Shown: positions 3,228 to 19,923 of the stretch, one piece after another
How the letters are laid out: every line of letters begins with the position of its first letter
Position numbering within the stretch: position 1 is the first letter of the stretch
Origin: Octopus bimaculoides
Lineage: Eukaryota
NCBI RefSeq assembly: GCF_001194135.2
Contig: NC_068983.1
Location: 3,950,498-3,985,755 of the forward strand
DNA: 35,258 nucleotides
Reading direction: 5' to 3'
The notes under the pieces: generated by a model
What the model was told of the DNA's origin: nothing
Database searches by the model: none
What the model saw: only the letters and a program-made list of their open reading frames with translations
Translations under genes and position numbers: made by a program

Positions 3228-3391
3228 CGCATCGACTCCTTTAAAACTGCTTTCAAGTAAGGCATGTTAGTTAAGTGTGAACTTTGACACGGTTGACCCT
3301 GTAGCGTCCGGGAAATTTCATCATGAAGTTTTTCTTGAACTTCAGGGTTGCTAGCCAAAAGGTAGATAGCAAATCCGAGAGAATTGGAGGC
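3228..3391 (-). CDS. Mitochondrial-clan cytochrome P450, exon 6 (I, J, K helices)
   Basis: tcttctacag acceptor; 164 nt = 54 codons+2: ASNSLGFAIYLLASNPEVQEKLHDEISRTLQGQPCQSSHLTNMPYLKAVLKESM-CG; GTAAGC donor. Contains NPEVQEKL, MPYLKAVLKE and ExxR. Not in the ORF track. Confidence 0.96.
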
Positions 3392-3544
3392 CTGTAGAAG
3401 ACATGAGGACAGGGTAAGATTAGAATTATTTAAGGTTAGTAAAGGGTGTTAAGGCTATAGAGTAAAAGGCAGAGTTTACTGTTACTGTTGACTACTTCCG
3501 GTTAGGTAACAATGGCGAGCTTATTAAACATGGTGAGTACAGTA

Positions 3545-3790
3545 TCGTCCTCATGGTCATCGTTTTAAAGTCCGCTTTTCCATGGAACAAACGGAATTTG
3601 TGAGTCATATTTTATACAACCGGACACACCTCCTGTCGACAATCCTCGTCTGTTTTCAAGCAAGGTAATATTTCCCCATGGCCTGGTATGTTTTCCACAG
3701 ATTACTGGAAATGAACAACGTCGCTTATATGATGGTGCTGCTCGTTTACATCCATCACATGATGTGAAGACAAGGGCATAAACAACCTCG
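3545..3790 (-). mobile_element. SINE family C-related 3' segment
   Basis: CATCGTTTTAAAGTCCGCTTTTCCATG...; similar to 13175-13432. Confidence 0.6.
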
Positions 3791-3800
3791 CATACATATC

Positions 3801-4034
3801 GTATTTCATTATTGCCCACAAGGGGCTACACATAGAGGGGACAAACAAGGACAAACAAACGGATTAAGTCGATTATATCGATCCCAGTGCGTAACTGGTT
3901 CTTAATTTATCGACCCCGAAAGGATGAAAGGCAAAGTCGACCTCGGCGGAATTTGAAATCAGAACGTAACGGCAGACGAAATACCACTAAGCATTTCGCC
4001 CGGTGTGCTAACGTTTCTGCCATCTCGCCGCCTT
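3801..4034 (-). mobile_element. SINE family B (MetaSINE-like core) with 9-bp TSD
   Basis: Core GCCTTTCATCCTTTCGGGGTCGATAAATTAAG; ATACATATC at 3792-3800 and 4035-4043. Confidence 0.88.
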
Positions 4035-4159
4035 ATACATATCTGGTCATTGAAAACAAGCGAGGGTTGGTACAGCAAGAGCACCTATTAATGAAGACTA
4101 TGATGATGAATACAGACAAAAAAAGAAAATACAAAGTAACTAAGCAGACAGAATTTTAC

Positions 4160-4329
4160 CGTATCAAGACCTGCCAAGAACAGTTCAGCCATGTTGGAAT
4201 AAATCTCTGCCATTGAAAATGAAGGATTGCTTAGAAGAAAGTTGAGTAAAGCGGTTCCATTTTGGGGTGGGTCAAGTTGTGATCTGTCTTTTGAATATCC
4301 CACCAATTGCTGATCAATAAATTCTTGAG
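4160..4329 (-). CDS. Mitochondrial-clan cytochrome P450, exon 5 (end of G, H, I helix)
   Basis: ttctttctatttaaag acceptor; 170 nt = 2+56 codons: (A)QEFIDQQLVGYSKDRSQLDPPQNGTALLNFLLSNPSFSMAEIYSNMAELFLAGLDT; GTAAAA donor; I-helix AGxDT motif. Confidence 0.96.
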
Positions 4330-4559
4330 CTTTAAATAGAAAGAAGAAAACAGAACATATACAATGTGGTGGTAGCAATGAAGTTTGGTCAAGGAGAGGG
4401 AGAAATGGTATGTTAGCAAAAAGAGAGAGAGAGAGAGTATGTTAGCAGAAAGAGATAGGGGGAGGGAGAGAAAGAGAGAGAGAGAGAGAGATAGAGAGTA
4501 AAAGAAGGTTAAAAGGTAAAGTTGAACTTATAAAAAAACTAATTTCTCCCTTGGGGGAA

Positions 4560-4720
4560 GGGAGTAAATTGGCCCCAGTTTCTGACAAGTATTTTAGATT
4601 ATCAATTACGATAAGATCAAAGGTAAGTTTGACGCCATCGAGATTTGAACTCGGAACGTAAAGAGAGCTTTAAAGAGAGACCATAAGGTCGTTTTCCCGA
4701 CTCTCCAACGGTTCTACTAA
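4560..4720 (-). mobile_element. SINE family B, decayed
   Basis: AAGGTAAGTTTGACGCCATCGAGATTTGAACTCGGAACGTAA resembles the family B head region. Confidence 0.55.
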
Positions 4721-4911
4721 TCTGCTGTACACGCACGCGCACACATTTGATTTAACCAAAAGAAAAGATGAGGAAGAAGAGAAGACATGCAGACAGTCTC
4801 TTTTTCCCTATACAATGAAAATAACGAACACTTATTTATAATACGTTGTGGAGACCATAGGACATAATAGAGACAATCGGAAAAGTAGCGCCAGAGGGGG
4901 AGGAGGAGAGG

Positions 4912-4943
<32 letters not shown>

Positions 4944-5375
4944 GAGAGAGAGAGAGGGGGGGGCTCCATCACGGGGGAGCCAAGTGAGATACTGGCCTTT
5001 AAGTTTTAACCAGCCCCTAAGTTTAACTACTGGCGCCATCCATACAAGACGCGTGTTTCAGGGTCAGTCTAGAGTGGGATAATTGCGATTCTATTTTGCT
5101 CCGACGTACCTTTTTTTCAAAAGACTCTTAATTGATACGAAAATATTTTCATTCCATCCTTTTCTATTATTTTAATCTTTTCTTTATCTTAATCCTCTTG
5201 TCTTGTCTTTTCTCTTCGTTGCCTCTTCCCCACTCCGCCTGTTTGCTTTTATTTATTTCGTCCTGTCTTCCGCTCCTTATATCTTTGATGGGACGAACGA
5301 AATTGCTCAACGTATTTTGATATATAAACAGCCAAACCGCGACCGACGCCCCCACCTTTCTGTATGCTCCTTCCC

Positions 5376-5412
<37 letters not shown>

Positions 5413-5775
5413 ACAGAGCTCAGTGGAGAAGCTGTTGCTACCCATCCAACGTCCTGAAGGTAGAAAGAACGCAGCGTATAGCGAGGTCCAATCTATCCAT
5501 AGGTGGTGGTCATCATCACTGCAACGCCTGCAACAAATCTGCATATCCCATGCGTATCGGAAGTGAGCTAGAACGTTAAAACTTAGTGCGCATGCTCAGC
5601 AGGGTTCAAGGTCAATCTGTATCAAGCGGCTTCACTCTGCGTGCTTTAGCTTCGTGTAGGGTTTGTATTCTCGGACATGGAACTAAGAACACTATGCAGT
5701 CATGTCCTGCTCAACCCTCAATCGTCAAAGCGACGAGAGAGAAAGAGAGAGAGAGACTTCGATAATGTGCATATC

Positions 5776-6092
5776 TTTTATCTTTTACTTGTGTCGGTCA
5801 TGAAACTGTAGCCATGCTGTGGCCTACGTTTTTAAACGCGGTACTTATTCTGGCTAAGTTACGGGACCGTAAACACACCAACACCGGTTGTCAGGTCGTG
5901 GTAGGAGAGAAACAGAGACACAAAGATACAAACATATATACGACGGGCTTCTTTCAGTTTCCGTCTACCAAATCCACTCACAAGGCTTTTTGGTCGGCCC
6001 GAGGCTATAGACGAAGACACTTGCCCAAGTTGTTATGCAATGGGACGGAACCCGGAACCATGTGGTTGGGAAGGAACAGGCTTCTTCCTACA
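5776..6092 (-). mobile_element. SINE family A (tRNA head, internal microsatellite)
   Basis: Reverse complement of the 6406-6798 consensus, including GACGGGCTTCTTTCAGTTTCCGTCTACCAAATCCACTCACAAGGC. Confidence 0.85.
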
Positions 6093-6405
6093 CACCCACC
6101 CCTGCACACCTTATGTCAGTAGGATATATTATTTTATACATCACTTCTCTCTATGACTGTTTCCCGACATCATTGTTCCCAGTCGCGGATTTTCCCATTT
6201 ACAAATAAATTGATTTTACATTTTCATCATCGATCATCAGAGGAAAACAGTCTGCAACTCCAAGAACCGAAGATTCTCTAAATTACCGATGTAAAACCGC
6301 GACTGCGTACAGAACTCCAAGTACTGTGGCGTTCGGGAATTAACGAACATCCCCGATGTATACGATGAAATTCTTTTCTCTTTTTTAAAAAATTGGACAC
6401 ATTCG

Positions 6406-6798
6406 TAGGAGTAGGAGTGGCTATGTGATAAGTAGCTTGCTTACGAACCACATGGTCCCGGGTTCAGTTCCACTGCGTGGCACCTTGGGCAAGTGTCTTC
6501 TACTATAGCCTCGGGCTGACCAAAGCCTTGTGAGTGGATTTAGTAGACGGAAACTGAAAGAAGCCCGTCGTATATATGTATATGTATATATATATGTGTA
6601 TGTGTTTGTCCCAATATCGCTTGACAACCGATGCTGGTGTGTTTACGTCCCCGTAACTTAGCGGTTCGGCAAAGAGACCGATACAATAAGTACTAAGCTT
6701 CCAAAGAATAAGTCCTGGGGTCGATTTGCTCGACTAAAGGCGGTGCTCCAGCATGGCCGCAGTCAAATGACTGAAACAGGTAAAAGAGTAAAAGAGAA
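6406..6798 (+). mobile_element. SINE family A, full-length
   Basis: GGAGTGGCTATGTGATAAG (A box), GGGTTCAGTTCC (B box), GGCACCTTGGGCAAGTGTCTTC core, internal (TA)n(TG)n, tail ACTGAAACAGGTAAAAGAGTAAAAGAG. Confidence 0.9.
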
Positions 6799-7384
6799 TT
6801 AGATCTGCCATGAAAAATGCATCGAAATAAAATTGAAATCTTTTAACAAAATGTGCATCGTTCATCAGCAAAAACGTGATTTGTTCGCGAAGAAAGAGAT
6901 GTAAAAGATACCATTAAACTAACTCTTGTATCTCTCCCTCTCACCACACACACATATTTGCCCTGTGGTCATTGTAATAAAATCCCTTAAAGAACCATTT
7001 CTGATATGCTTTCAATTACCCCATGAACCCCCACTACAGAAAATACAAATAGCCATTACAGTGAAACGTGCGTTGTGAAACACACTAAAAAGTGCATTTT
7101 GCGTTTATCATACTTCTCTACACCTCCCTCCCCCCTCACACATACACTCACACACACATCTATATGACATTGTACCGAAGGACAACAACGTCCTTGGAAC
7201 AAACAATTTACAAACCGTCTAAAGAATAAAAAACAAATGATTAAAATAAAACAAATATTAAGAACAGGATAAAAAACAAACAAAAAGATAATGTAAAGAA
7301 AAAAATATATAAAAATTCACAGCCAAATCAACAACAGGAATAGTTGGACATTCCAAACTGACTTGACCTCGTCATGTGTAAATA

Positions 7385-7408
7385 CTACATACACAGGCAT
7401 ATGTGTGA

Positions 7409-7441
<33 letters not shown>

Positions 7442-7443
7442 GA

Positions 7444-7481
<38 letters not shown>

Positions 7482-7513
7482 GATGTGTGTGTGTGTATAT
7501 ATATATATGTGTG

Positions 7514-7546
<33 letters not shown>

Positions 7547-7660
7547 ATGTATATATATATATATAGATACATATATATATATATATGTATATATGTATAT
7601 ATATATATATATATAGATACATACAAACACACACATATGTGCACGCGTACATACACATGA
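7385..7660. repeat. Compound (TA)n/(TG)n microsatellite
   Basis: Directly visible. Confidence 0.97.
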
Positions 7661-7685
7661 TTGACCGTTGACTGAACACTATTCA

Positions 7686-7835
7686 ATTTTTTTTCTCCGT
7701 GTTTTTCTCCTTGTCTCCGTATTCTTTCTGTTGAAGAGCGTAGCTCGAAACGTCAAAGACTTTCCGTATTCCCGAGCGTCATACTAATATATACTTTTGT
7801 TATTTACACCACCTGTCCTCGTCTGTTGTTATTTT
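7686..7835 (+). repeat. Dispersed repeat, Penelope-like terminal segment (copy 2)
   Basis: TTTCTGTTGAAGAGCGTAGCTCGAAACGTCAAAGACTTTCC...CTAATAT. Confidence 0.45.
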
Positions 7836-7867
7836 TTGTATAATCTCCTACATATATACATACGCAG

Positions 7868-7901
<34 letters not shown>

Positions 7902-8049
7902 TTATATATATCGACGCACACATACATATGTATGCTGCAGTGGTTTTGGCAGTCGTTGGCCGGTGTTTAGGAGAGTAGTGATGGGGTGGCTTTGATAACG
8001 TGTTGGTGGTGGTTGTGGTGTGCTGTTTCAACAGGTATCTCAGTACTGT

Positions 8050-8098
<49 letters not shown>
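8050..8098. repeat. (TAG)n microsatellite
   Basis: Directly visible, about 16 units. Confidence 0.97.
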
Positions 8099-8469
8099 TA
8101 GACGTGTCGCCAATGTCCGCTAACCGTGGTGGTGAGCTGGTAAAAAAGAGCACACACACACAATCACTGACGTATCCTTTTGTTTGTTTGTTTATTTGAT
8201 TTCTTTCTTTTTTTTTCACCTGGTGACCCTTGTACTCATCCAGACTTAGCAACGACGAGGGAAGTTGAGTGGACACAGGAAGTGTGTGAATGGCGACAGG
8301 GATTGGTGGATGGAAGGAACAATGAGGCAGGGAGAAGAGGTGGGAGATGTTATGAATTGAACAAAATAATCGCTATTTTTATTTGAACCAATCTCTCATA
8401 TTAAAATGCGCATACACGTGTATGTATACACCCCGTCCCTTTCTATCTTTCCGCGTACATACATACATA

Positions 8470-8670
8470 CATAGTTCAGATTACAAGTTCAGGTCTATAC
8501 CTATAATTATTGGGGCCCTAAGATACTTAACACACTGCCTAGATACCAATGTTGAGAAATTAGGCTTCCCAAAACCAGAAAAGAGAAAGCTAATTCAAAG
8601 TCTACAGACCACGCCGTCACTGGAACTGTAAAAATCTGTAAAACTTTCCGGAAGTTTATCATTTAAATAT
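8470..8670 (+). mobile_element. RLE-type LINE 3' remnant
   Basis: YKFRSIPIIIGALRYL...HAVTGTVKICKTFRKFII* (one frameshift); shares the PIIIGAL motif with 30411-30717. Confidence 0.7.
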
Positions 8671-8759
8671 ATATATAAGTATGTCCAGATATGCAAATAT
8701 ATGCATGAGAATACATACATAAAATGAAACATACAAATCTGCACATACATATATATACA

Positions 8760-9050
8760 TACAAAAATACCCTGTTGTTGATGTTGAAATTCCAATGAAG
8801 TTGAAATTCCTATTGACAAGAAATCTTGAATTAAAACTGAACAATGACATAATACATACACATACTTGTGCCTATCATCATAGGTGCATTAGGCCATGTA
8901 CCGAAAATTTCAGACAAAAACCTAGAAATACGAGGTTTTTCGAAGAAAAAGCAATAGAAGCTGATGCGGATTTTATTAGTGGCACAATGACAACCTCTAA
9001 GACATTCTAAAGATTCTCCAATTGAGATTCTTAAATTGGATCTGTTCACA
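8760..9050 (+). mobile_element. RLE-type LINE 3' remnant (decayed)
   Basis: ILVPIIIGALGHVPKISDKNLEIRGFSKKK at about 8860-8955. Confidence 0.6.
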
Positions 9051-9182
9051 TACTTGGTTGCGTACATCTACAAAGACACACACTGAACTGTCTCAACTCA
9101 AAATGCCTTGTTTCTTTGTTAGCGACCGGCTTGAACTCTATGAAGCACGAAGAAAAACTTCAATAAATCTAAAAAGCATATA

Positions 9183-10013
9183 CAGGGTGCGATGGGTAAA
9201 TTGTCGCCAATTTATATTTTTAATTTCGCGCATTGTTTTTGATTTTGTCGTCTGCACAGTATAGTAGGGTCATTAGGCACCGTCTGTGGGAAAAACAGCG
9301 CCATGACACAATTCGCTTTGCCAGAAATTTGGAAACGACATGCTGTACTGCTTGGAACTTTCACCAGAAGCTCCAATACGAACATTTCAGAGTGTTTGGG
9401 TGTCAATCTGAGGACATCCAGTCAACATCATAGTGGTTGGAGTGATCACTAGTAATGGTAATGGTATGCCTCATTCATCTTCCCACACGGCCTCAGACTC
9501 AACGCGGAGGCTTACATCAAGTGCCTGGTGGAGGTAGTGCTACCCTGGGTCAAGAGGATGGATGCTGGAAGACCCTGCGACTGGCAACAGGACTGTGCAC
9601 CAAACTACAGAAGTAGGAGAACCCAGTTATGGCTGTCTGACAATTTCTGTGACCACATTACCCCTAACATCTGGTCAACTAACTCTCCAGACCGCAACAC
9701 TCTTGATTATTATGTGTGGGGCGCAGTTGAGCGAGAGACCAACAAAACTCCTTGTAACACTAAATATGAACTGAAGGCAAGGATCATGGCAGCATTCACC
9801 AACTTAAACAAGGAGACCGTCCAAAAGAGTTGCAAGAGATTCCGAAGTCATCTGGAGGCCGTGATTGAAGCCAATGGCGATTTTGAATAAATTTACTCTT
9901 TAGTATTTCAAGATATTCTTATGTAATTTTGGTAAATATAACTGCTAAAATGAGATGTCAGTGTTATTTTCCTTTTTGTGTAATTTAGACGACAGTTTAT
10001 TCACTGCACCTTA
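9183..10013 (+). mobile_element. Internally deleted maT-like (DD37D) Tc1/mariner element
   Basis: ORF 9528-9890 WQQDCAP...NSPDRNTLDYYVWG has 37 residues between the last two Asp. Degenerate TIRs (CAGGGTGCGATGGGTAAATTGTCG vs TAAGGTGCAGTGAATAAACTGTCG), TA-flanked. Confidence 0.85.
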
Positions 10014-10142
10014 TATATCCATATATACACGTATACATACACGGTGTGACAGGAAACCCTCACGTGATTTACATGGCCATTCTTGTGGTGCAAGTGAAGT
10101 TAGGTAGGTGGTATCTTCGTGTCGCTAATATTCTATCGATTC

Positions 10143-10550
10143 CTAAGGCGGTGAGTTGGCAGAATCGTTAGCACGCCGAGCAAAAAATACTTGGCGATAT
10201 ATATCGTCCGTCTTTACGTTCTGAGTTTTATTCTTCCGGGGTCGATAAAACGAGTACCAGATGGGTACAGGGGTCGATGCAATCGACTTGCTCCCTCACT
10301 CGAAATTGCTGGCCATGTAACAAAATTTGAAATCAATATTTTATCGATTTCTAAAGCGGCAAGCTGACAGAATGGTTAGCACACCGGACAAAATGCTTCG
10401 TAGTGTTTCTTCCGGCTCTGTATATTCAAATTACCCCGAGATCAACTTCCTTCCTATCGGGGGTCGATAAAATAAATACCATTCGAGCACCGGGGATTCA
10501 TACAATCGACTAGCCCCCCACCACCTCCCCACAAAAGATCTCAGGCCTTG
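10143..10550 (+). mobile_element. SINE family B tandem dimer (10143-10334 and 10352-10550)
   Basis: Two AAGGCGG..GAG.TGGCAGAAT heads, each with a GGGGTCGATAAAA core. Confidence 0.8.
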
Positions 10551-10559
10551 TGAAGGGAT

Positions 10560-10850
10560 ATTTTACCGAATTCCTTTCAGTTACCAAAATGGCTTGCAAT
10601 GGTTGCACACCGTGCAATAAATTACCGGACAAGGGAGCAGTGGGCATGATTTGTGTAGAGCCAGTATCACTCTCTCGTCCGTCAAACTTGTGGGACGTTT
10701 ATAACCATTTGCCAAGGGAGCAATCCCATGCTCTCAACACCGAAGTCCCATTTTTCGTCAACCCTTGGCTTTTCAACCGCATACAATCTCCAGTTTTTTA
10801 AACTTTAAATGGTTTTCATTAAATTGAAAGGTTGATTCATTTGTAAAGTC
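10560..10850 (-). mobile_element. Possible highly decayed Tc1/mariner transposase fragment
   Basis: Minus strand gives FTNESTFQFN (like the first-Asp FxDESxFQLN motif), then NWRLYAVEKP and AHCSLVR in shifted frames. Confidence 0.3.
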
Positions 10851-10897
10851 AAAACTATGAATCGATATAAAACTCTGTTTTTTTCTTTTTCTTCTCT

Positions 10898-12300: not shown

Positions 12301-12379
12301 ACGTTGTTAAAATGTTTGACGCAGCAAACCATTCGTTAAATAAGTACAATAACAACAACAAAGATAAAAAGACTAACGC

Positions 12380-12897
12380 AAACACGCATAATATATATAT
12401 ATATATGTGTATATATATATATATACATATATATATATGTATATATATATATGTGTGTGTATATATATATATATATATATAGATAGATAGATAGATATAT
12501 AGATATGTATATATATATATATATAGATATGTATATATGTATATGTATATATGTATATGTATATATATTGTATATATGCAAGGTCATAGATATACACAAC
12601 TAGAACAGTAAAAAAAAAAGGAACAAAACACTGCAACATTCCAGAAACATCCATTTCTACCCTCCCCCCTCCAAACATAACAAACAAAACATAAAAGAGG
12701 CTCTGACAAATATGTATGAGTGTGTGTGTATGTACGTCTATATATATGTATGCAAGTTTGTGTGTGCGTGTGTGTGAGAATGTATGTGTGTGTGTATATG
12801 TATGTATGTATATATGAGTGTGTGTATCTGTATATGTGTGTGTGACTGTATATATGTATGTGTGCGTGTATGCATGCGGGTTTGTGTATGGGTGTAG

Positions 12898-12949
<52 letters not shown>

Positions 12950-13135
12950 ATGTGTATGCATAGGTGTATCTGCATATGCAAACGGTACGTATGTATGTAT
13001 ATATGTGTGTGTGTATGTATGTGTGTATGTATGTATGCGTGTGCGTATTCACGTGAAAGCGTGTATATTTGTACGTGTTTATATGTATACGTATACGCGT
13101 GGCTGTGAGACGGTATGTATAATTATACGGTTGTG
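12380..13135. repeat. Long compound (TA)/(TAGA)/(TG)/(TATG) microsatellite field
   Basis: Directly visible, with a short non-repeat insert at about 12580-12715. Confidence 0.95.
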
Positions 13136-13174
13136 AGTTCGTTTGTGTGTATGTGAATGAATATCTGCGCGTGA

Positions 13175-13432
13175 GATCATCACCATCACCTGTAGCGTCA
13201 GCGTCCGCAACGCTTTAACGTCCATTTTTCCATGCTTGCTTGTGTCATACAGAAATTGTCGAGGCTGATTTTTATGGCTGGATGCCCTTCCTGTCACCAA
13301 CCCTCGTGTGTTTCCAAACAAAAGAATGTTACTTTGTGGCCAGGTATGATTATTATAATTATTTCTTTTAACAGAAGACCAGGGATGAACAACATAGCGA
13401 TGCTCGTTTACAACCATCACGTGATGTCAAGG
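13175..13432 (-). mobile_element. SINE family C-related 3' segment
   Basis: TTTAACGTCCATTTTTCCATGC...ATGGCTGGATGCCCTTCCTG. Confidence 0.68.
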
Positions 13433-13451
13433 TAAGCGCGCGTTCAGCCAC

Positions 13452-13491
<40 letters not shown>

Positions 13492-13989
13492 TCATCGACC
13501 ACAACTGCTTAACTTCCCAAGCTAACCTGTCATATCTCGACTTTTCTTTCTTCTTTATCGCATACCTTGTTGTCAGCTGGGCATGCTATATCTATGATCC
13601 ATCATCATTTGCTTTCTTTCTCTCTCAATTAAGACTATGTCCGGCTTCCTATTCTCTATCTCATGGTCGCACTTATTATTATTATTATTATTATCATTTT
13701 TAGTAAAGTGGTTTAATGTTAAGTAGATTGTTTGTGAGATCTTTAAGCAAGAATCGAATGCCTAATGCGTTTGCTGACTAATTAAATAAAAGGTTATCCA
13801 CCTACTGGTAAGGAATTTACTTGTCGGTAAACATATAACTACCGGCTTTAGATGAAAAATAAACAACAGTAAAACACAGCGCACAAGTCTTTTCTGTTAA
13901 GTCAATGTTTAGTACAAGGAAGATGACGTCACTGTACAAGCCCAGTGTGTCATTAGATTTACTGATGTCCTTGTTGGCCGCTTCGTTCA

Positions 13990-14400
13990 AGTCATGGCTG
14001 TGTGGTTAAGAAGTTCGCTTTGCAATCACGAGATTACCGGTTCAGTCCCACTGCGCGGCACCTTGAGCAAGTCGTTTCTACTATACTCCGGGCCGAGCAA
14101 TTTCTTGTGAGTGAATTTGGTAGACGGAAACTGTGAGGAAACCTGAGATATATACATGTATGCGTGTGTGTGTTTATGTGTATGTGCGCACGAGTTTGTC
14201 TCCCACCGCTTGACAACCGGTGTTGGTTTGTTTATGCCCTGTAACTTAACGGTTCCACAAAAGAGACCGATAAAATAAGCACCAGACTTAAAAACTTGTA
14301 CTGGGGTCGTTTTGTTCGACTAAACTCTTGCAAGTCGGTGCCCCAGCATGGCCGTAGTCCAAATGACTGGAACAAGTAAAAGATAAAAGATATCTATCTA
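13990..14400 (+). mobile_element. SINE family A, full-length
   Basis: TGGCTGTGTGGTTAAGAAGTTCGC head through GAACAAGTAAAAGATAAAAGA tail. Confidence 0.85.
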
Positions 14401-14431
14401 CCACACATACAAAAAGAAACTCGTACACACG

Positions 14432-14835
14432 GGCGCAGGGGTGGCTGTGTGGTAAGTAACTTGCTTCACAACCACATGGTTCTGGGTTCAGTCCCACTGC
14501 ATGGCACCTTGGGCAAGTGTCTTCTACTATAGCCTCGGGCCGACCAAAGACTTGTGAGCGGATTTGGTAGACGGAAACTGATAGAAGCTTGTCGTATATA
14601 TATGTGTTTGTGTGTGTGTGTGCGCGCATGTCTGGGTGTCTGTGTTTGTCCCCCCCCCCCATCGCTTGACAACCGATGTTGCTGTGTTTACGTATCCGTA
14701 ACTTAGCGGTTCGGCAAAAGACACCGATAGAATAAGAACTAGGCTTACAAAGAATAAGTCCTGGGATCGATTACTTTTACGAAAAAGCGGTGCTCCAGCA
14801 TGGCCGCAGTCAAATGACTGAAACAACTAAAAGAA
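14432..14835 (+). mobile_element. SINE family A, full-length (tandem with previous copy)
   Basis: GCGCAGGGGTGGCTGTGTGGTAAG head through ACTGAAACAACTAAAAGA tail. Confidence 0.88.
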
Positions 14836-14844
14836 CATATCGCC

Positions 14845-15045
14845 AACATCATCATCTGTTTTCCATGCTGGCATGGGTTGGATGGTTTGACACGCTCCAG
14901 TGAGCCAGAGGTTTGCATCAAGCTCGTCTGTTCTGGTATGGTTTCTATGGCTGGATGCTCTAATTAACGCCAACCACTTTATAGAATGGATTGGGTATTT
15001 TTTGTGTGGCACCGACACCAGTGGAGTTACCAAGTACCTTGCACG
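14845..15045 (-). mobile_element. SINE family C 3' end
   Basis: CATCATCATCTGTTTTCCATGCTGGCATGGGTTGGATGG...GGCTGGATGC. Confidence 0.72.
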
Positions 15046-15079
15046 TTAAAGAAAGAGAAGAAAGACGTCCCTCAACTGA

Positions 15080-15570
15080 TTGGGGTTGTGGTGGAAAGGG
15101 AGAAGCATGGGTGCTTTGCTAAAGATGAAATACATGGTTACCCTGCATTATATACGGGTGGATGAGAGTAGCTGGGAAAGCGGCAAAGATGGTGGAGACA
15201 AGATATCAGAGTATGTAGTGAAGATAGGAGAAGGTGAGTGTAAGGGAAATATGGAGATAGAATGAGGAAGGGTGGGAGGATAGGTTTATTAGAGAGAATA
15301 AGAGGAAAGTGGGAGGGGGTAGAGATGATTGTAGCTGAATGATAAACAAGAGCCGAAGGTGTTGTTGAGGGTAAATATCCGAATGAAAAATGGCGAAGAT
15401 GAAAGAAATAGAAGTTGAAGAAAGAGGAGGTGATAAATGGGAGTAGAGGGAAGGGAGGGAGGTGAACAGCAGAATAAATAAATAAGCCTGTAAATAGACC
15501 AAAAGATAGGGAGATGATGTGGAGGGAGAGAGAGTGGAAGAGAGAGAGAGAGATGTGTGCGTGCGTGCGC
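15080..15570. repeat. Purine-rich (GA) low-complexity tract
   Basis: Strong G/A bias on the plus strand; a similar tract lies at 17520-17770. Confidence 0.7.
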
Positions 15571-15571
15571 G

Positions 15572-15995
15572 CACAGCTGTGTAGTTAAGAAGTTCGCTTC
15601 CACTGTGGTTTGAATTTGAACCCCCCCCCACGCTTGATATCTTGAGCAAGTATCTTGGTCTACCAAGGCGTTTTTTGCGAATGGATTTGGTCGACGGAAA
15701 TTGTATATGCATGAGTGTGTTTATGTCACCTTGTCGTGACATTGTGCGTTAATAGTAAACAAATGTCACCGTCATACATACGGTGTCGTTCGTTTGTGAT
15801 CTTGAATGAAATCATGCCCAGCTATTGTGCTATTCGTGTTCGAAGGACCAGATAAATATTTATCTTATTTGGAAACAGGTGAAGGTTGACGACAGGAAAG
15901 GTATCAGGCCGTAGAAAATCTGTCTCAACGAATTTCGTCTAACCCATGCACGCATGGGAAAGAGGACGTTAAAATGATGATGATGATGAAGATGA
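15572..15995 (+). mobile_element. SINE with tRNA-like head and family C (GAT)n tail, ending about 27 nt from the exon 4 donor
   Basis: GCTGTGTAGTTAAGAAGTTCGC head...AACCCATGCACGCATGGGAAAGAGGACGTTAAAATGATGATGATG. Confidence 0.65.
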
Positions 15996-16022
15996 ATGTG
16001 TGAATATGTAAGTTTGACTTAC

Positions 16023-16223
16023 CTAGACCATAGATTATATCAGATGACGATACATGCTTCTGCCAAATTTTAGTATTAAGGAATTGGTGTATACTGGCAC
16101 CGATTGCCATTTGGTGCCCAGTAACGAACATTACTCCGACCGCATCGATGAGATCTTGGATGTTCTGTGGCATTGTATCTGCCAAACAGCCCAGTCGCGA
16201 ACCGAAGAGAACATAACCGACAG
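16023..16223 (-). CDS. Mitochondrial-clan cytochrome P450, exon 4 (E-F-G helices)
   Basis: ttctttatcattcag acceptor; 201 nt, phase 1-1: (S)VGYVLFGSRLGCLADTMPQNIQDLIDAVGVMFVTGHQMAIGASIHQFLNTKIWQKHVSSSDIIYGL; GTAAGT donor. ES..VLFG.RLGCL is typical of mitochondrial-clan P450s. Confidence 0.95.
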
Positions 16224-16340
16224 CTGAATGATAAAGAATCAGAAACCAGTTTTAAAAAGCTTGAAAATTCGGAATTGGTTTGAGAAAATCAATATTTTAA
16301 GTCGAGTTAAATACAAAATTCACAGATTTGAACTACTTAC

Positions 16341-16531
16341 ATTCTGTGGCCCATTTGTAAAGTTCGTTTTGTAATAAGTCGACTGTATTGTCTTCTTTCC
16401 GGATTTTACGTATTCTTGTTAGCAAATCTAACGCTACGGTATTTAACTGGTCTGTATAACATGTAACTGCTTGAGGTCGCATCAATCGTGGGGCGATAGC
16501 ACTGCGGTACTTGTACCACTTGTGATCTGCT
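16341..16531 (-). CDS. Mitochondrial-clan cytochrome P450, exon 3 (C, D and start of E helix)
   Basis: tttgttttgacag acceptor; 191 nt = 1+63 codons+1: ADHKWYKYRSAIAPRLMRPQAVTCYTDQLNTVALDLLTRIRKIRKEDNTVDLLQNELYKWATE; GTAAGT donor; WxxxR motif. Not in the ORF track. Confidence 0.95.
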
Positions 16532-16787
16532 CTGTCAAAACAAATATATATACTTGAGATATTGAAGAAGTGTTTCGAACATAGAATTCTGTTGTGGAAT
16601 TCCTTTAATGGAAAGTATTTTCAGAGTTTAAACTTAATACAGAAGAATGAAACTTTCTCACTCTCACTCTCATGCTGTAAAACTGACCGGAAGTTATCAA
16701 ACCAAACAACATTTATAATGTGGCTGTGTGGTCAGCGAAGTTTACTTCCCGACCACGTGGTCCAGGGTTTATTGGAACAGGTAATTT

Positions 16788-17270
16788 ATTCTTTTATTTT
16801 TTTACTTGTTTCAGTCATTTGACTGCGGCCATGCTGGAGCACTGCCTTATTCTTCGTAAGATTTGTATTTGTTCTATCGGTCGTCTTTAACGAAGCGCTA
16901 AGTTACAGGGACGTAAACAACCAACATCGGTTGTCAAGCGATGGTGGGGGGTGGGGAGAAACACAGACACATACAAATACACACATCTATCTNNNNNNNN
17001 NNNNNNNNNNNNNNNNNNNNNNNNNNNNNNNNNNNNNNNNNNNNNNNNNNNNNNNNNNNNNNNNNNNNNNNNNNNNNNNNNNNNNNNNNNNNNNNNNNNN
17101 NNNNNNNATATATATATATATATATACTAAGGGCTTCTTTCAGTTTCCGTCTACCAAATCCACTCACAAGGCTTTGGTCAACCCGGGGCTATAGTAGAAG
17201 ACACTTGCCCGAGGTACCATGCAGTGGAACCATGTGATTGGGAAGCGAGCTTCTTACCACACAGCCACTC
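16788..17270 (-). mobile_element. SINE family A; internal microsatellite replaced by N gap 16993-17107
   Basis: Tail and 3' half lie left of the gap; core and head (CCACACAGCCACTC) lie right of it. Confidence 0.85.
16993..17107. other. Assembly gap
   Basis: Run of N. Confidence 1.
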
Positions 17271-17319
17271 TTGTGTTTTGTTTTTTGTTTCATTTTCTTT
17301 CCAATCCTCCTCATCACCG

Positions 17320-17450
17320 AACATCCATCTTCCATGGTCAGGACAGTTTGACAGGATCCTACGAGTGCGAAGGTTTGCATTGTACTCTGATGTTTGTTTG
17401 AGCAAAATTTCTATGGCTGTGTGCCCTTCCTAACGTTAACCACTTAACAG
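17320..17450 (-). mobile_element. SINE family C remnant
   Basis: CATCTTCCATGG...TTTCTATGGCTGTGTGCCCTTCCTAACG. Confidence 0.55.
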
Positions 17451-18663
17451 TATGTATTGAGTGCTATCATCATGCAACTCGCAAAACTAAGCCACCCGCT
17501 TCTGACTGAGTGGCGCCACGGTAGAGAGAAAGGTAGCTTTAGGCTACGAGGTGGGAGGCTAAGATGTGAGAGAAAAGCCCAGGACACAACTGATCTCTAC
17601 TCGTATTATAGAAGAGAGGCTGGAACGTGACTAGGTTGAAGGTGGAGAGAGAACTAAAATAATGATGATGAGGTGAGAAGGGAGACGCTAAGGATATTAG
17701 GTAAGAAGAAACAAGGGAACAGAATGTGTGGATGGGTAGAAAAAGAAGGTGAGGGAATTGGTCAGGGAATGACATGTAATATTTTTATTAATTACTCTCA
17801 AAAAAAAAAAAAAGTTATGACTCCAAAATCGAAATAAAAGCGCCTTCGATAAGGTCAAAATGGTGCGTTGAAAGTGGAAGGATTTGATTGGTTAAAATTA
17901 CAAAAATTATTCAACCATCAAACGTTTGTAACTTTTTTTTTATTACTTTATGTGTCAAAAAAAAAATGTTAGAAGTAGCATATCAAAGCGAAAAGATTTG
18001 GTCTACGATCCAAGTAGAGGAACGTCTCCCGAATAGCACTGACAAGGTTTTGGTCGACATGAAGCTACAAGTGTCAGGGGTGCCGAGCAGTGGAATCGAA
18101 CTTGAAACTAAGTAGGTATAAAATAAATTTCTTAGCAACACAACCTGGATGGCGTCTATCGTAGGATGGTCGTGAATCTAAGAAGACAAGATGTCCAAAT
18201 TTGTCCTTTTGATTTAGTCAGTTTTGGGGGACCTGCAACGCTGACTGGTGTTGTTATTCCGCTAAAAGGAGAAAGAATTCTCCTCGCTTCTAGATTTTCG
18301 GTAATTCCAGCATTGAAAATAGATCCAAATTAAATTTAAGAACCTCTACCAGACTTGTTTAGGACTGCGTGTGCATGTGTGTGGGGGTTTTGGTGGAAAG
18401 GCAACTCCCGAAAAAAACAGTTTAATTAATAAACAAGTGCTAATTGTATCCAGCTGAAGAGAAATTTACTGAGAATTGTATAAAGACACACCCTTTAGGA
18501 AGAAATTAATAGCGGTGTGTCGATAGCTTTACGGCATCGATGCCTAACAGTCCAGAACATCAAGGAAGGGGGAAAAAAAAAAAAAAAAACTTCGTTCATT
18601 GAAATTTTATTTCCATTTATTCATGATAACACTAAGGAACAAAAATATATTTATACACACACG

Positions 18664-18694
<31 letters not shown>

Positions 18695-19191
18695 NNNNNN
18701 NNNNNNNNNNNNNNNNNNNNNNNNNNNNNNNNNNNNNNNNNNNNNNNNNNNNNNNNNNNNNNNNNNNNNNNNNNNNNNNNNNNNNNNNNNNNNNNNNNNN
18801 NNNNNNNNNNNNNNNNNNNNNNNNNNNNNNNNNNNNNNNNNNNNNNNNNNNNNNNNNNNNNNNNNNNNNNNNNNNNNNNNNNNNNNNNNNNNNNNNNNNN
18901 NNNNNNNNNNNNNNNNNNNNNNNNNNNNNNNNNNNNNNNNNNNNNNNNNNNNNNNNNNNNNNNNNNNNNNNNNNNNNNNNNNNNNNNNNNNNNNNNNNNN
19001 NNNNNNNNNNNNNNNNNNNNNNNNNNNNNNNNNNNNNNNNNNNNNNNNNNNNNNNNNNNNNNNNNNNNNNNNNNNNNNNNNNNNNNNNNNNNNNNNNNNN
19101 NNNNNNNNNNNNNNNNNNNNNNNNNNNNNNNNNNNNNNNNNNNNNNNNNNNNNNNNNNNNNNNNNNNNNNNNNNNNNNNNNNNNNNNNNNN
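18695..19191. other. Assembly gap flanked by (TA)n
   Basis: Run of N. Confidence 1.
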
Positions 19192-19232
<41 letters not shown>

Positions 19233-19254
19233 GTATGTATATTTATAAATATAT

Positions 19255-19445
19255 AGGCTGTGTGGTAAGTAGCTTGCTTACCAACCACATGGTCCCGGGT
19301 TCAGTTCCACTGCGTAGCACCTTGGGCAAGTGTCTTCTATTATAGCCTCGGACCGACCAAAGCCGTGTGAGTGGATTTGGCAGACAGAAACCCAAAGAAG
19401 CCTGTCGTATATGTATATATATGTATATGTGTGTGTGTATATGTT
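19255..19445 (+). mobile_element. SINE family A, 5' half
   Basis: GGCTGTGTGGTAAGTAGCTTGCTTACC...GAAGCCTGTCG then (TA/TG)n. Confidence 0.85.
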
Positions 19446-19454
19446 TGTATGTTT

Positions 19455-19579
19455 ATCAACCCCGAAAGGATGAAAGGTAAAGTCAACCCCGGCAGGATTT
19501 AAACTCAGAACGTAGCGGCAGACGAAATACTGTTGAGCATTTCGCCCGGCATGCTAACAATTCTGCCAAGCTCGCCGCC

Positions 19580-19613
<34 letters not shown>

Positions 19614-19822
19614 TTTCAAATTTTACCTCAAGGGCAGTCATTTTGGAAGAGGGGATAAGTCGATTACATCGACCCCAGTGTTTCACTGGTACTAAATTAA
19701 TCGACCCCGAAAGGATGAAAGGCAACGTGGAGCTCGGTGGAATTTGAACTCAGAACGTAGTGGCAGACGAAATGCCGCTAAGCATTTCGCCCGATGCGCT
19801 AACGATTCTGCCAGCTGCCACT
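19455..19822 (-). mobile_element. SINE family B tandem pair (19455-19580 partial; 19612-19822) separated and flanked by (TAA)n
   Basis: Two CGACCCCGAAAGGATGAAAGG...CTGCCA copies; (TAA)n at 19581-19610 and 19828-19874. Confidence 0.87.
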
Positions 19823-19828
19823 TTAATC

Positions 19829-19875
<47 letters not shown>

Positions 19876-19885
19876 TCTTACTTAC

Positions 19886-19923
19886 GCCGTCATTAAACCC
19901 GTTTCTTTCTTTCTTAGTTCTTT
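19886..19923 (-). CDS. Mitochondrial-clan cytochrome P450, exon 2 (3' end only; remainder in N gap 19924-20471)
   Basis: Minus strand reads KELRKKETGLMT+GC then a GTAAGT donor. GC plus the first A of exon 3 gives Ala and GLMTAADHKWYKYR, in frame and matching the residues expected before the C-helix WxxxR. Confidence 0.85.

What the first reader, a model, noticed from the sequence alone, without database searches (positions are those of the whole stretch)
3228..19923. Mitochondrial-clan (CYP27/CYP24-like) P450 assembled from scattered exons, with vertebrate-like intron positions
Seen: five exons join in frame (intron phases 2,1,1,0,2) into 255 codons carrying WxxxR, ES..VLFG.RLGCL, AGLDT and ExxR. 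Established (from recall): vertebrate CYP11/CYP27 genes have introns just before the C-helix, at E|S/A, in the G-helix, at GxDT|T and inside the ExxR Arg, the same positions as here. ADHKWYKY, YTDQLNTV, VGVMF and LLNFLLS resemble CYP27A1. Inference: an invertebrate sterol or retinoid hydroxylase of unknown substrate. Mitochondrial-clan P450s act on cholesterol, vitamin D and vitamin A, so it is a candidate for cephalopod steroid (optic gland) or chromophore metabolism.
Basis: partly seen in the sequence, partly recalled or inferred. Interest (0 to 1): 0.72.

Follow-up and report, generated by a model that had tools for sequence, protein, structure and literature searches.

The report
Octopus mitochondrial-type P450 gene, middle exons
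The scattered coding pieces are real: they are exons 2 to 6 of an already annotated Octopus bimaculoides gene for a mitochondrial-type cytochrome P450 whose substrate is unknown, so the finding is correct but ordinary.

Summary
On the minus strand, five coding pieces (19923-19886, 16531-16341, 16223-16023, 4329-4160, 3391-3228) join through canonical GT-AG sites with phases 2,1,1,0,2 into 254 codons plus two bases of the ExxR Arg codon. The four complete exons are 100% identical to RefSeq XP_052821947.1, "cytochrome P450 27C1 isoform X1", of Octopus bimaculoides. The two flagged gaps lie inside one intron, so no reading frame crosses them. A third gap (19924-20471) cuts off the 5' part of exon 2, which is why the RefSeq model starts artificially at "MTA". 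Four more exons, including the heme loop PFGHGSRSCIG, lie just outside the window. The O. sinensis ortholog (526 aa) is 98.9% identical over the shared 374 residues. Solved mitochondrial P450s (CYP24A1, CYP11A1, CYP11B) match far better than any microsomal P450. All five intron positions and phases match fish CYP27A1 and CYP27C1, and the four testable ones match mammalian CYP24A1. They also match oyster and annelid CYP371B1 genes, and four of the five match a sea-anemone gene, so they are ancestral rather than vertebrate-specific. The gene belongs to a mollusc-wide group nearest the annelid family CYP371 and is not a one-to-one CYP27C1 ortholog. Its substrate is unknown.

The parts
19886..19923 (-). 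Exon 2, last 38 nt only (KELRKKETGLMT plus GC of Ala). It covers the B'-C loop just before the C-helix. Donor GC|GTAAGT, phase 2.
   Evidence: The frame is open to the gap edge. It is 100% identical to O. sinensis XP_029633989.1 residues 143-155 and aligns with YKEMRKRNRGIMSA of homologs. Exon numbering follows the 10-exon oyster ortholog.
19924..20471 (.). Assembly gap that hides the 5' part of exon 2 (about 153 nt expected) and its acceptor site.
   Evidence: Exon 2 is 191 nt by the O. sinensis protein, 194 nt in oyster and 191 nt in Capitella.
16532..19885 (-). Intron 2, 3,354 nt in the assembly. It contains both flagged gaps (16993-17107 and 18695-19191), repeat copies and microsatellites.
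   Evidence: GTAAGT...TTTGACAG; gap flanks collinear within one repeat copy; (TA)n on both sides of the second gap.
16341..16531 (-). Exon 3, 191 nt: ADHKWYKYRSAIAPRLMRP...YKWATE. It holds the C-helix WxxxR. Donor phase 1.
   Evidence: The oyster exon has the same length.
16224..16340 (-). Intron 3, 117 nt.
16023..16223 (-). Exon 4, 201 nt: SVGYVLFGSRLGCLADT...VGVMF...SSSDIIYGL. Donor phase 1.
   Evidence: The exon is also 201 nt in oyster and Capitella.
4330..16022 (-). Intron 4, 11,693 nt with no gaps. It is filled with interspersed repeats, microsatellites and transposon debris.
4160..4329 (-). Exon 5, 170 nt: AQEFIDQQL...LLNFLLS...AELFLAGLDT. It holds the I-helix oxygen-activation motif. 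Donor phase 0.
3392..4159 (-). Intron 5, 768 nt.
3228..3391 (-). Exon 6, 164 nt: ASNSLGFAIYLLASNPEVQEKL...MPYLKAVLKESM plus CG of Arg. It holds the K-helix ExxR and the two K-helix lysines. Donor phase 2.
   Evidence: The oyster exon has the same length.
1..3227 (-). First part of intron 6. Exons 7-10 (79, 157, 44 and 108 nt, with heme loop PFGHGSRSCIG and stop TAA) lie beyond window position 1, at L001 38593-44046.
20472..35258 (-). Probably intron 1 (inferred). No P450 coding sequence was detected here.
   Evidence: tblastn with the O. sinensis N-terminus and 11 homologs, plus a profile search of all six frames, found nothing. The O. sinensis gene spans 113.7 kb.

Best explanation
**What it is.** The region holds exons 2 (3' end only) to 6 of a 10-exon, intact, protein-coding gene of Octopus bimaculoides, LOC for XP_052821947.1, on chromosome record CM046603.1. 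The gene encodes a mitochondrial-clan (type I) cytochrome P450 monooxygenase.

**Shown:**
- the exon-intron structure;
- identity to the annotated protein;
- a complete set of P450 catalytic motifs: C-helix WYKYR, I-helix AGLDT, K-helix ESMR, and outside the window PERW and the heme-thiolate loop PFGHGSRSCIG;
- clan placement with CYP24, CYP27 and CYP11;
- membership of a mollusc-wide orthologous group whose nearest named relative is annelid CYP371B1;
- an ancestral gene structure shared with oyster, annelid, sea anemone and vertebrate CYP27/CYP24.

**Inferred mechanism.** The protein is imported into mitochondria through a basic, acid-free presequence, which is seen in the O. sinensis ortholog. 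It receives two electrons from NADPH by way of adrenodoxin reductase and adrenodoxin. Adrenodoxin docks on the conserved basic residues (LKAVLKESMR in the K-helix and C-I-G-R-R after the heme cysteine). The enzyme then inserts one oxygen atom into a lipophilic endogenous substrate.

**Substrate.** By analogy with every characterised member of this subclade, the substrate is most likely a sterol, secosteroid or isoprenoid. Which one cannot be read from the sequence.

**Other points.** The short RefSeq model (374 aa, starting MTA) is an assembly-gap artefact, not a truncated gene. The large gene size comes from repeat-filled introns.
For: Identity and annotation:
- Exons and phases.
- 100% identity to P0001/XP_052821947.1. 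Genomic placement.
- Pfam PF00067: E 4.7e-39 for the window peptide, 5.5e-102 for the full ortholog.

Clan placement:
- Every solved mitochondrial P450 listed outranks every other P450, both for the window peptide and for the full-length ortholog.

Intactness:
- The heme loop is present and there are no stops in exons 7-10.
- The O. sinensis ortholog is 526 aa and identical at 370 of 374 shared residues. The Argonauta ortholog is 84% identical.
- Contigs from four sequencing runs of another cephalopod carry the orthologous coding sequence uninterrupted. One was aligned to the 764-nt window coding sequence and gave a single collinear alignment across all four junctions.

Gene structure and family:
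- The intron map is identical in column and phase to Capitella CYP371B1 (8 of 8). Oyster shows the same junction contexts and phases and six identical exon lengths. Fish CYP27A1/C1 share 7 of 8, Nematostella 7 of 8, and CYP24A1 6 of 7 testable.
- NJ tree: octopus plus Argonauta 100%, mollusc clade 99%, CYP27/24/11-plus-cnidarian clade 95%.
- P0194 is CYP371B1 by exact motif positions and is 42% identical to the ortholog.

Targeting:
- In the ortholog's first 62 residues there are 0 acidic and 8 basic residues.
Against: - Exon 1 and most of exon 2 are not assembled or not found for O. bimaculoides. Intactness of the 5' end therefore rests on the ortholog.
- No O. bimaculoides RNA reads could be examined here.
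- The tree is neighbour-joining with simple distances. Deep nodes are weak: 57% for the link to CYP371B1, and 23-54% among CYP27, CYP24 and CYP11.
- No enzymatic, localisation or redox-partner evidence exists.
- The literature held here says molluscs lack CYP11A and classical vertebrate steroidogenesis (PMC9493083). This cautions against reading a steroid-hormone role into the gene.
Confidence: 0.88

Rival explanations
1. It is a truncated or decaying gene copy (pseudogene). The N-terminal third is truly missing in O. bimaculoides, and the 374-aa RefSeq product would lack the presequence and the A/B helices.
For: The RefSeq models start at MTA (374 aa) or at an internal Met (355 aa). Residues 1-142 of the ortholog were not found in the 15 kb upstream within the window.
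Against: - The reading frame is open exactly to the edge of an assembly gap. The 13 residues before the annotated part are 100% identical to the ortholog.
- All nine mapped exons are free of stops and frameshifts and have canonical splice sites.
- The protein is 98.9% identical to O. sinensis.
- The O. sinensis gene spans 113.7 kb, so exon 1 is expected well outside the window.
Confidence: 0.04
2. It is the true ortholog of vertebrate CYP27C1, as the RefSeq name says, and therefore a retinoid 3,4-desaturase that tunes the visual chromophore.
For: The RefSeq name is given. Identity to fish CYP27C1/CYP27A1 is 33-37%. Gene structure is shared at 7 of 8 introns.
Against: - In the tree all vertebrate CYP27 sequences form their own clade (100%). 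The octopus protein sits inside a mollusc clade (99%) with annelid and nemertean proteins.
- It is as similar to CYP24A1 (38%) as to CYP27.
- Successive automatic names differ for the same protein: 27C1, 1-alpha-hydroxylase-like, and side-chain cleavage enzyme. These names are best-hit labels only.
Confidence: 0.04
3. It is the functional counterpart of CYP11A1, a cholesterol side-chain cleavage enzyme that starts pregnenolone-type steroid synthesis in the optic gland.
For: The UniRef name is 'Cholesterol side-chain cleavage enzyme, mitochondrial'. CYP11A1 is the second-best solved relative. The annelid literature proposes mitochondrial-clan P450s as candidates, although it names a different family, CYP376.
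Against: - A vertebrate CYP11A1 fragment does not group with the octopus clade.
- A review-type paper states that CYP11A homologues have not been found in mollusc genomes and that side-chain cleavage activity is absent or weak in molluscs (PMC9493083).
- Capitella CYP371B1, the nearest named relative, was placed with CYP27s and not with CYP11A.
Confidence: 0.05
4. It is a mitochondrial P450 that acts on xenobiotics or diet-derived compounds, like insect CYP12, rather than a dedicated enzyme of endogenous signalling.
For: Some mitochondrial-clan families in arthropods metabolise xenobiotics (general knowledge). No substrate information is available here.
Against: - Clear orthologs at 42-47% identity, with the same gene structure, occur across molluscs and annelids. 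The two octopus species are 98.9% identical. This pattern suits a conserved endogenous role better than the lineage-specific blooms typical of detoxification P450s.
- In the tree the gene is far from CYP12.
Confidence: 0.1

Closest known systems
RefSeq XP_052821947.1 / XP_052821948.1 (Octopus bimaculoides 'cytochrome P450 27C1' isoforms X1/X2; UniProt A0A0L8FV76), and the O. sinensis ortholog XP_029633989.1
   Same: It is the same gene. The four complete window exons are 100% identical to the RefSeq protein, and the splice junctions are the same. The O. sinensis protein matches at 370 of 374 shared residues.
   Different: The RefSeq model starts at an internal Met (MTA) because exon 2 is cut by the gap at 19924. 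The window's open frame adds 10 residues upstream of that Met (KELRKKETGL), which match O. sinensis. About 142 N-terminal residues are still unassembled or unfound.
CYP371 family (Capitella teleta CYP371B1; Helobdella CYP371A1), lophotrochozoan mitochondrial clan
   Same: It is 42% identical to the octopus ortholog. All 8 mapped introns share column and phase, including the heme-loop intron that vertebrates lack. It clusters with the mollusc clade. It was published as the Capitella P450 that groups with the CYP27s (PMC4229089).
   Different: Bootstrap support for the link is only 57%. The Capitella model has one extra 63-nt exon. No official CYP name is known for the octopus protein. Neither protein has a known function.
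Vertebrate CYP27A1 / CYP27C1 (sterol 26/27-hydroxylase; retinoid 3,4-desaturase)
   Same: Both are mitochondrial-clan P450s at 33-37% identity. Seven of 8 intron positions and phases are identical, including all five inside the window. Both carry the GRRIAE motif after the heme cysteine.
   Different: The octopus gene is not a one-to-one ortholog, because the vertebrate CYP27 clade is separate at 100%. Vertebrate genes lack the phase-1 intron in the heme loop. Their substrates are known; the octopus substrate is not.
Vertebrate CYP24A1 (1,25-dihydroxyvitamin D3 24-hydroxylase; PDB 3k9v)
   Same: It is the best solved relative: E 2.8e-33 for the window peptide and 4e-89 for the full ortholog. 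The K-helix LKA-LKESMR is near-identical. Six of 7 testable introns are shared.
   Different: CYP24A1 has two additional introns (NE|VL and KT|MM) and lacks the heme-loop intron. No vitamin D endocrine system is known in cephalopods to my knowledge.
CYP11A1 / CYP11B (vertebrate steroidogenic mitochondrial P450s)
   Same: They belong to the same clan and rank second and third among solved structures.
   Different: They are more distant (224-261 and about 190 bits, against 303 for CYP24A1). They do not group with the octopus clade. CYP11A is reported absent from molluscs (PMC9493083). CYP11 gene structure was not tested here.

Membership tests
Cytochrome P450 superfamily (Pfam PF00067) | Significant match to the family profile above the curated cut-off | tested here: met
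   Window peptide: 134.9 bits, E 4.7e-39, cut-off 22.8, profile positions 93-333 of 462. Full ortholog: 342 bits.
Cytochrome P450 superfamily (Pfam PF00067) | Catalytic motifs: C-helix WxxxR, I-helix (A/G)Gx(D/E)T, K-helix ExxR, PERW, and the heme-thiolate loop FxxGxRxCxG | tested here: met
   WYKYR, AGLDT and ESMR lie in the window. PERW and PFGHGSRSCIG lie in exon 8, outside the window.
Mitochondrial clan (type I animal P450s: CYP11, CYP24, CYP27 and invertebrate relatives) | Groups with mitochondrial-clan members rather than with microsomal clans | tested here: met
   All mitochondrial P450 structures in the PDB list rank first. Scores are 303 to 179 bits, against at most 134 bits for CYP3A4 and others. 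The window peptide alone gives the same order. The NJ tree places it inside the CYP27/24/11-plus-cnidarian clade at 95%.
Mitochondrial clan (type I animal P450s: CYP11, CYP24, CYP27 and invertebrate relatives) | N-terminal mitochondrial presequence instead of a hydrophobic microsomal anchor | tested here: inconclusive
   Exon 1 of this gene is not assembled. In the O. sinensis ortholog the first 62 residues hold 0 Asp/Glu and 8 Arg/Lys. This is only a composition check; no targeting predictor was run.
Mitochondrial clan (type I animal P450s: CYP11, CYP24, CYP27 and invertebrate relatives) | Conserved basic residues used for adrenodoxin docking (two Lys in the K-helix; Arg-Arg after Cys-x-Gly) | tested here: met
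   LKAVLKESMR aligns with LKACLKESMR of CYP24A1 and LKAAIKETLR of CYP11A1. CIGRRIAE aligns with CIGRRLAE and CVGRRIAE. The docking role of these residues is taken from general knowledge.
Mitochondrial clan (type I animal P450s: CYP11, CYP24, CYP27 and invertebrate relatives) | Electron supply by adrenodoxin and adrenodoxin reductase | not testable with these tools
   Needs biochemistry.
Mitochondrial clan (type I animal P450s: CYP11, CYP24, CYP27 and invertebrate relatives) | Shared intron positions and phases with clan members | tested here: met
   Exact exon maps of six other genes were compared; five of them and the octopus gene were placed on one alignment. All five window introns are shared with fish CYP27A1 and CYP27C1, Capitella CYP371B1 and oyster. 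Four are shared with Nematostella and four with CYP24A1. CYP11 was not tested.
CYP371 family | At least 40% amino-acid identity to a named member (the usual CYP family rule) | tested here: met
   42% identity to P0194. P0194 equals CYP371B1 because four motif sequences and their positions match the published tables exactly. The value is borderline.
CYP371 family | Monophyly with named CYP371 members in a phylogeny | tested here: inconclusive
   It clusters with Capitella CYP371B1 plus Ridgeia, but at only 57% bootstrap in an NJ tree. Helobdella CYP371A1 was not available.
CYP371 family | Name assigned by the P450 nomenclature committee | not tested
   No nomenclature list was on hand.
Vertebrate CYP27C1 (the RefSeq name of this protein) | One-to-one orthology with vertebrate CYP27C1 | tested here: not met
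   Vertebrate CYP27A1 and CYP27C1 sequences form one exclusive clade (100%). The octopus protein lies in a mollusc clade (99%).
Vertebrate CYP27C1 (the RefSeq name of this protein) | Retinoid 3,4-desaturase activity | not testable with these tools
   Needs an enzyme assay.
CYP11A1 (the UniRef name of this protein) | Orthology with vertebrate CYP11A1, or cholesterol side-chain cleavage activity | tested here: not met
   The CYP11A1 fragment does not group with the octopus clade. CYP11A is reported absent from mollusc genomes (PMC9493083). Activity cannot be tested here.

The most novel reading that the evidence does not exclude
The conserved mollusc/annelid CYP371-like clade, which includes this gene, could be the still unidentified mitochondrial sterol side-chain oxidase of lophotrochozoans. 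In octopus it would make the oxidised cholesterol or 7-dehydrocholesterol derivatives, or bile-acid-like intermediates, that have been linked to optic-gland control of reproduction and death. That would be a steroid-type pathway built on a P450 family different from vertebrate CYP11A1 and CYP27A1.
Probability: 0.1. Interest if true: 0.6.

Novelty: already known. Interest (0 to 1): 0.18.

Why it matters
As it stands this is a correct re-discovery of an annotated gene.

Three modest points are added:
- The RefSeq protein of O. bimaculoides is truncated at its N-terminus by an assembly gap, not by biology.
- Its automatic names (27C1, 1-alpha-hydroxylase-like, side-chain cleavage enzyme) overstate orthology. 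The gene belongs to a lophotrochozoan group nearest CYP371.
- The 10-exon structure of this subclade is ancient. It is shared from sea anemone to fish and octopus, with the heme-loop intron absent from the vertebrate CYP27 and CYP24 genes examined. The octopus has expanded the gene from about 4 kb (oyster) to more than 34 kb, and to about 114 kb in O. sinensis, with repeat-filled introns.

Functional interest would arise only if the enzyme were shown to act on sterols or retinoids in a defined octopus tissue.

Tried and rejected
**Search for N-terminal exons in the window.** I ran tblastn with 11 full-length homologs, a profile HMM against all six-frame ORF pieces, and tblastn with the near-identical O. 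sinensis N-terminus. Only the 13 residues at 19923-19885 were found. The hits at about 8119-7982 are poly-Thr low-complexity matches and were rejected.

**Protein-database search with the N-terminal 155 aa.** It returned nothing, not even the known cephalopod ortholog P0165. It is therefore uninformative, not negative evidence.

**O. sinensis genomic DNA.** It could not be fetched because the gene range is too long. No dN/dS and no O. sinensis intron map were possible.

**Vertebrate CYP11A1 gene structure.** The only CYP11A1-like representative, P0150, is not on record with a locus.

**Mammalian CYP24A1 model P0051.** It has 145 junk N-terminal residues. Its C-helix intron therefore could not be scored. 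A polypyrimidine-CAG acceptor sits at the expected place in L002, but this is only suggestive.

**Other searches.**
- Rfam scan of the window: no RNA families.
- Literature on octopus optic-gland steroids and on P450 intron evolution: the key papers are not in the held library.

**Not done.**
- Bacterial-style ORF lists and promoter tools are not meaningful for this eukaryotic locus and were not used for inference.
- Structure prediction was not run, because the sequence evidence for the fold is already overwhelming.

Full report
**Source of the window**

The window matches Octopus bimaculoides chromosome record CM046603.1 (assembly GCA_001194135.2) at 100% identity. It corresponds to locus L001 in reverse orientation, with the same gaps. 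It contains four runs of N: 16993-17107, 18695-19191, 19924-20471 and 34160-34269.

**Checking the observation**

Reading that strand with its three frames gave five coding pieces with canonical splice signals:

| Window coordinates (minus strand) | Length | Peptide | Phase at 3' end |
|---|---|---|---|
| 19923-19886 | 38 nt | KELRKKETGLMT plus GC; donor GTAAGT | 2 |
| 16531-16341 | 191 nt | ADHKWYKYR...YKWATE | 1 |
| 16223-16023 | 201 nt | SVGYVLFGSRLGCL...DIIYGL | 1 |
| 4329-4160 | 170 nt | AQEFID...LLNFLLS...AGLDT | 0 |
| 3391-3228 | 164 nt | ASNSL...LKAVLKESM plus CG | 2 |

- The join is 764 nt, which is 254 codons plus two bases of the ExxR arginine.
- The joined 242-residue core matches Pfam PF00067 at E 4.7e-39.
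- It is 100% identical over its full length to a protein in the public collection, XP_052821947.1, "cytochrome P450 27C1 isoform X1 [Octopus bimaculoides]".

**The assembly gaps**

An exact spliced mapping of the RefSeq protein on L001 places both flagged gaps inside the 3,354-nt intron between 19886 and 16531. No reading frame runs across them.

- Gap 16993-17107 splits one copy of an abundant interspersed repeat. The left flank matches positions about 5-193 and the right flank about 207-349 of another copy. Order and orientation are the same against five copies. The flanks are therefore collinear and little sequence is missing.
- Gap 18695-19191 has (TA)n on both sides.
- The splice across these gaps is independently supported. 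The full-length Octopus sinensis ortholog (XP_029633989.1, 526 aa) reads ...YKELRKKETGLMTAADHKWYKY... without a break.

The gap that does matter was not flagged for this finding. It is 19924-20471, and it abuts the first piece.
- The frame is open right to the gap edge.
- Only 38 of about 191 nt of that exon are present. The exon is 191 nt by the O. sinensis protein, 194 nt in oyster and 191 nt in Capitella.
- This explains why RefSeq starts the protein at an internal Met ("MTA", 374 aa). The truncation is an assembly artefact.

**The rest of the gene**

Downstream:
- Four more exons (79, 157, 44 and 108 nt) lie at L001 38593-44046. They are beyond window position 1 and beyond a 3.4-kb gap.
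- They carry PERW, the heme loop PFGHGSRSCIG and a TAA stop.

Upstream:
- Residues 1-142 of the ortholog were not found anywhere in the window.
- The O. sinensis gene spans 113.7 kb, against 34 kb from exon 2 to the stop here. Exon 1 is therefore expected well beyond the window. Window 20472-35258 is probably intron 1. This is an inference.

Conservation and expression:
- The O. bimaculoides protein is identical to O. sinensis at 370 of 374 residues. Argonauta has an 84%-identical ortholog.
- Contigs from four sequencing runs of another cephalopod carry the orthologous coding sequence uninterrupted. The one I aligned (L007) covers the 764-nt window coding sequence in a single collinear match across all four junctions. 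These contigs must derive from spliced transcripts.

**What kind of P450 it is**

| Solved structure | Window peptide | Full-length ortholog |
|---|---|---|
| CYP24A1 (3k9v) | E 2.8e-33 | 303 bits |
| CYP11A1 | E 1.9e-29 to 2e-23 | 261-208 bits |
| CYP11B1 / CYP11B2 | about 1e-17 to 2e-15 | 192-179 bits |
| Best non-mitochondrial P450 | 6e-9 | 134 bits (CYP3A4) |

The K-helix LKAVLKESMR and the C-I-G-R-R-I-A-E stretch after the heme cysteine align with the same basic residues of CYP24A1, CYP11A1 and CYP27. General knowledge links these residues to adrenodoxin docking. The ortholog's first 62 residues contain no acidic and eight basic residues. This composition suits a mitochondrial presequence, but no targeting predictor was run.

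**Family placement**

- A library-wide search found full-length relatives at up to 44% identity, in which the RefSeq protein's first residue aligns at about position 150.
- A profile search that returns names showed the closest relatives to be mollusc proteins at 43-47% identity: Haliotis, Ostrea, Liolophura, Solemya, Gigantopelta, Argopecten, Lottia, Pinctada and Potamilus. Annelid proteins follow at 38-43%.
- One annelid protein, Capitella CAPTEDRAFT_199669, is CYP371B1. Its I-helix, ExxR, meander and heme-loop sequences, and their residue numbers, match the published tables exactly (PMC4229089). That paper reports that CYP371B1 clusters with the CYP27s.

My neighbour-joining tree (50 sequences, 487 columns, 100 bootstraps) gives:

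| Grouping | Bootstrap support |
|---|---|
| Octopus plus Argonauta | 100% |
| Mollusc clade | 99% |
| Mollusc clade with Capitella CYP371B1 plus Ridgeia | 57% |
| Clade of vertebrate CYP27, CYP24, CYP11A1, invertebrate deuterostome and cnidarian proteins | 95% |

- That large clade is separate from the CYP44, CYP10-like, CYP49, CYP301 and CYP12 lineages.
- Vertebrate CYP27 forms its own exclusive clade (100%). The octopus gene is therefore not a one-to-one CYP27C1 ortholog.
- Branching among CYP27, CYP24 and CYP11 is unresolved (23-54%).
- The same protein has carried three automatic names: 27C1, 1-alpha-hydroxylase-like and side-chain cleavage enzyme. These are best-hit labels.

**Intron positions**

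I fetched the genomic loci of six relatives and mapped every exon exactly. Five of them and the octopus gene were placed on one alignment; the oyster gene was compared by its junction contexts, phases and exon lengths.

The five introns in the window are:
- before the C-helix, phase 2;
- at E|S, phase 1;
- in the G-helix region, phase 1;
- at DT|T, phase 0;
- inside the ExxR Arg codon, phase 2.

| Gene | Window introns shared (of 5) | Note |
|---|---|---|
| Fish CYP27A1 | 5 | lacks the heme-loop intron |
| Fish CYP27C1 | 5 | lacks the heme-loop intron |
| Oyster ortholog | 5 | six exon lengths identical to octopus |
| Capitella CYP371B1 | 5 | all 8 mapped octopus introns shared |
| Nematostella | 4 | lacks the G-helix intron |
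| Mammalian CYP24A1 | 4 | C-helix intron not scorable; two extra introns |

- The CYP24A1 gene model has a junk N-terminus, so its C-helix intron could not be scored.
- Octopus, oyster, Capitella and Nematostella share a further phase-1 intron in the heme loop (C-I|G). Fish CYP27 and mammalian CYP24A1 lack it.
- Octopus and oyster exon lengths are identical for six exons: 191, 201, 164, 79, 157 and 44 nt.

The oyster gene spans 4.4 kb. The octopus gene owes its size to introns full of repeats.

**Most likely mechanism**

Shown: an intact, conserved gene for a P450 with all catalytic motifs, of the mitochondrial clan. Spliced transcripts are shown only for the ortholog in another cephalopod.

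Inferred:
- import into mitochondria;
- reduction by NADPH through adrenodoxin reductase and adrenodoxin;
- oxygen activation at the heme thiolate with the I-helix Asp-Thr pair;
- mono-oxygenation of a lipophilic endogenous substrate.

Every characterised enzyme in the surrounding clade acts on sterols, secosteroids or retinoids, so a substrate of that general class is the best guess. I would put this at about 0.6. Orthology to any one vertebrate enzyme is not supported, so the substrate cannot be named. The literature held here states that molluscs lack CYP11A and show weak or no side-chain cleavage (PMC9493083). This argues against simply transferring vertebrate steroidogenic roles.

**Verdict**

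The useful additions are:
- the diagnosis of the truncated RefSeq model;
- the CYP371-like placement;
- the demonstration that the gene structure is ancestral.

Interest is low unless function is established.

Noticed in passing
window 5853-6105, 6405-6796, 11423-11768, 13995-14391, 14433-14840, 16787-16990 plus 17108-17274, 19256-19448, 20569-20941, 23145-23507, 24978-25163, 27825-28194, 28833-29288: There are at least 12 copies, on both strands and at 68-91% identity, of a ~350-400 bp interspersed SINE-like repeat. Its translation recurs as ...VYQIHSQGFGRPEAIVEDTCPRCH..ELNPGPCGW in many spurious ORFs, and also in the read-through tail of protein model P0016.
   Followed up: partly
window 3865-4041, 10352-10551, 10889-11098, 19452-19857, 22673-23140, 33508-33971: A second interspersed repeat family of about 170-400 bp at 70-88% identity. 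It is partly in tandem or nested arrangement.
   Followed up: no
window 16993-17107 and 18695-19191 (gaps): The first gap splits a single repeat copy whose halves are collinear. The second sits inside a (TA)n microsatellite. Both gaps look like repeat-induced assembly breaks with little unique sequence missing.
   Followed up: yes
window 25703-26269 (+): A remnant of a mariner/Mos1-type transposase lies in the presumed intron 1 (Pfam Transposase_1 E 1.7e-14; HTH_48 E 1.8e-4).
   Followed up: partly
window 9528-9890 (+) and 29922-30272 (+); also 13491-13673 vs 30109-29929: Two further ORFs look like transposon or retroelement debris but have no Pfam match above threshold. A 185-bp stretch at 91% identity links 13491-13673 with 29929-30109 in inverted orientation.
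   Followed up: no
window 19886-19923 and RefSeq XP_052821947.1 / XP_052821948.1: The RefSeq isoforms of 374 and 355 aa begin at internal methionines because exon 2 is cut by the gap at 19924. The public protein is an N-terminally truncated model of a roughly 526-aa enzyme.
   Followed up: yes
L001 41896-42052 / 42705-42748; L005, L006, L011: A phase-1 intron inside the heme loop (C-I|G-R-R) is shared by octopus, oyster, Capitella and Nematostella. It is absent from fish CYP27A1/C1 and mammalian CYP24A1, which points to an intron loss in the vertebrate lineages.
   Followed up: partly
L002 (mammalian CYP24A1 locus, GCA_003327715.1) 501-6127: In the deposited gene model for P0051 the first 145 residues are non-homologous junk. 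The true acceptor before EGEDW appears to be the polypyrimidine-CAG at about L002 11343.
   Followed up: partly
L005 1942-2004 (Capitella CYP371B1): The Capitella model has an extra 63-nt exon (TLEASSIQVLSTEEIYCVTKQ) that has no counterpart in any other aligned sequence. It is either a lineage-specific insertion or an annotation artefact.
   Followed up: no
window 7416-7623, 12391-13042, 19824-19875, 29600-29667, 30350-30410: There are long microsatellites: (TA)104, (AT)94 with TG/TA-rich arrays, and several (TAA)/(AAT) runs. They give the many 'YIYIYI' and 'IIIII' pseudo-ORFs.
   Followed up: no
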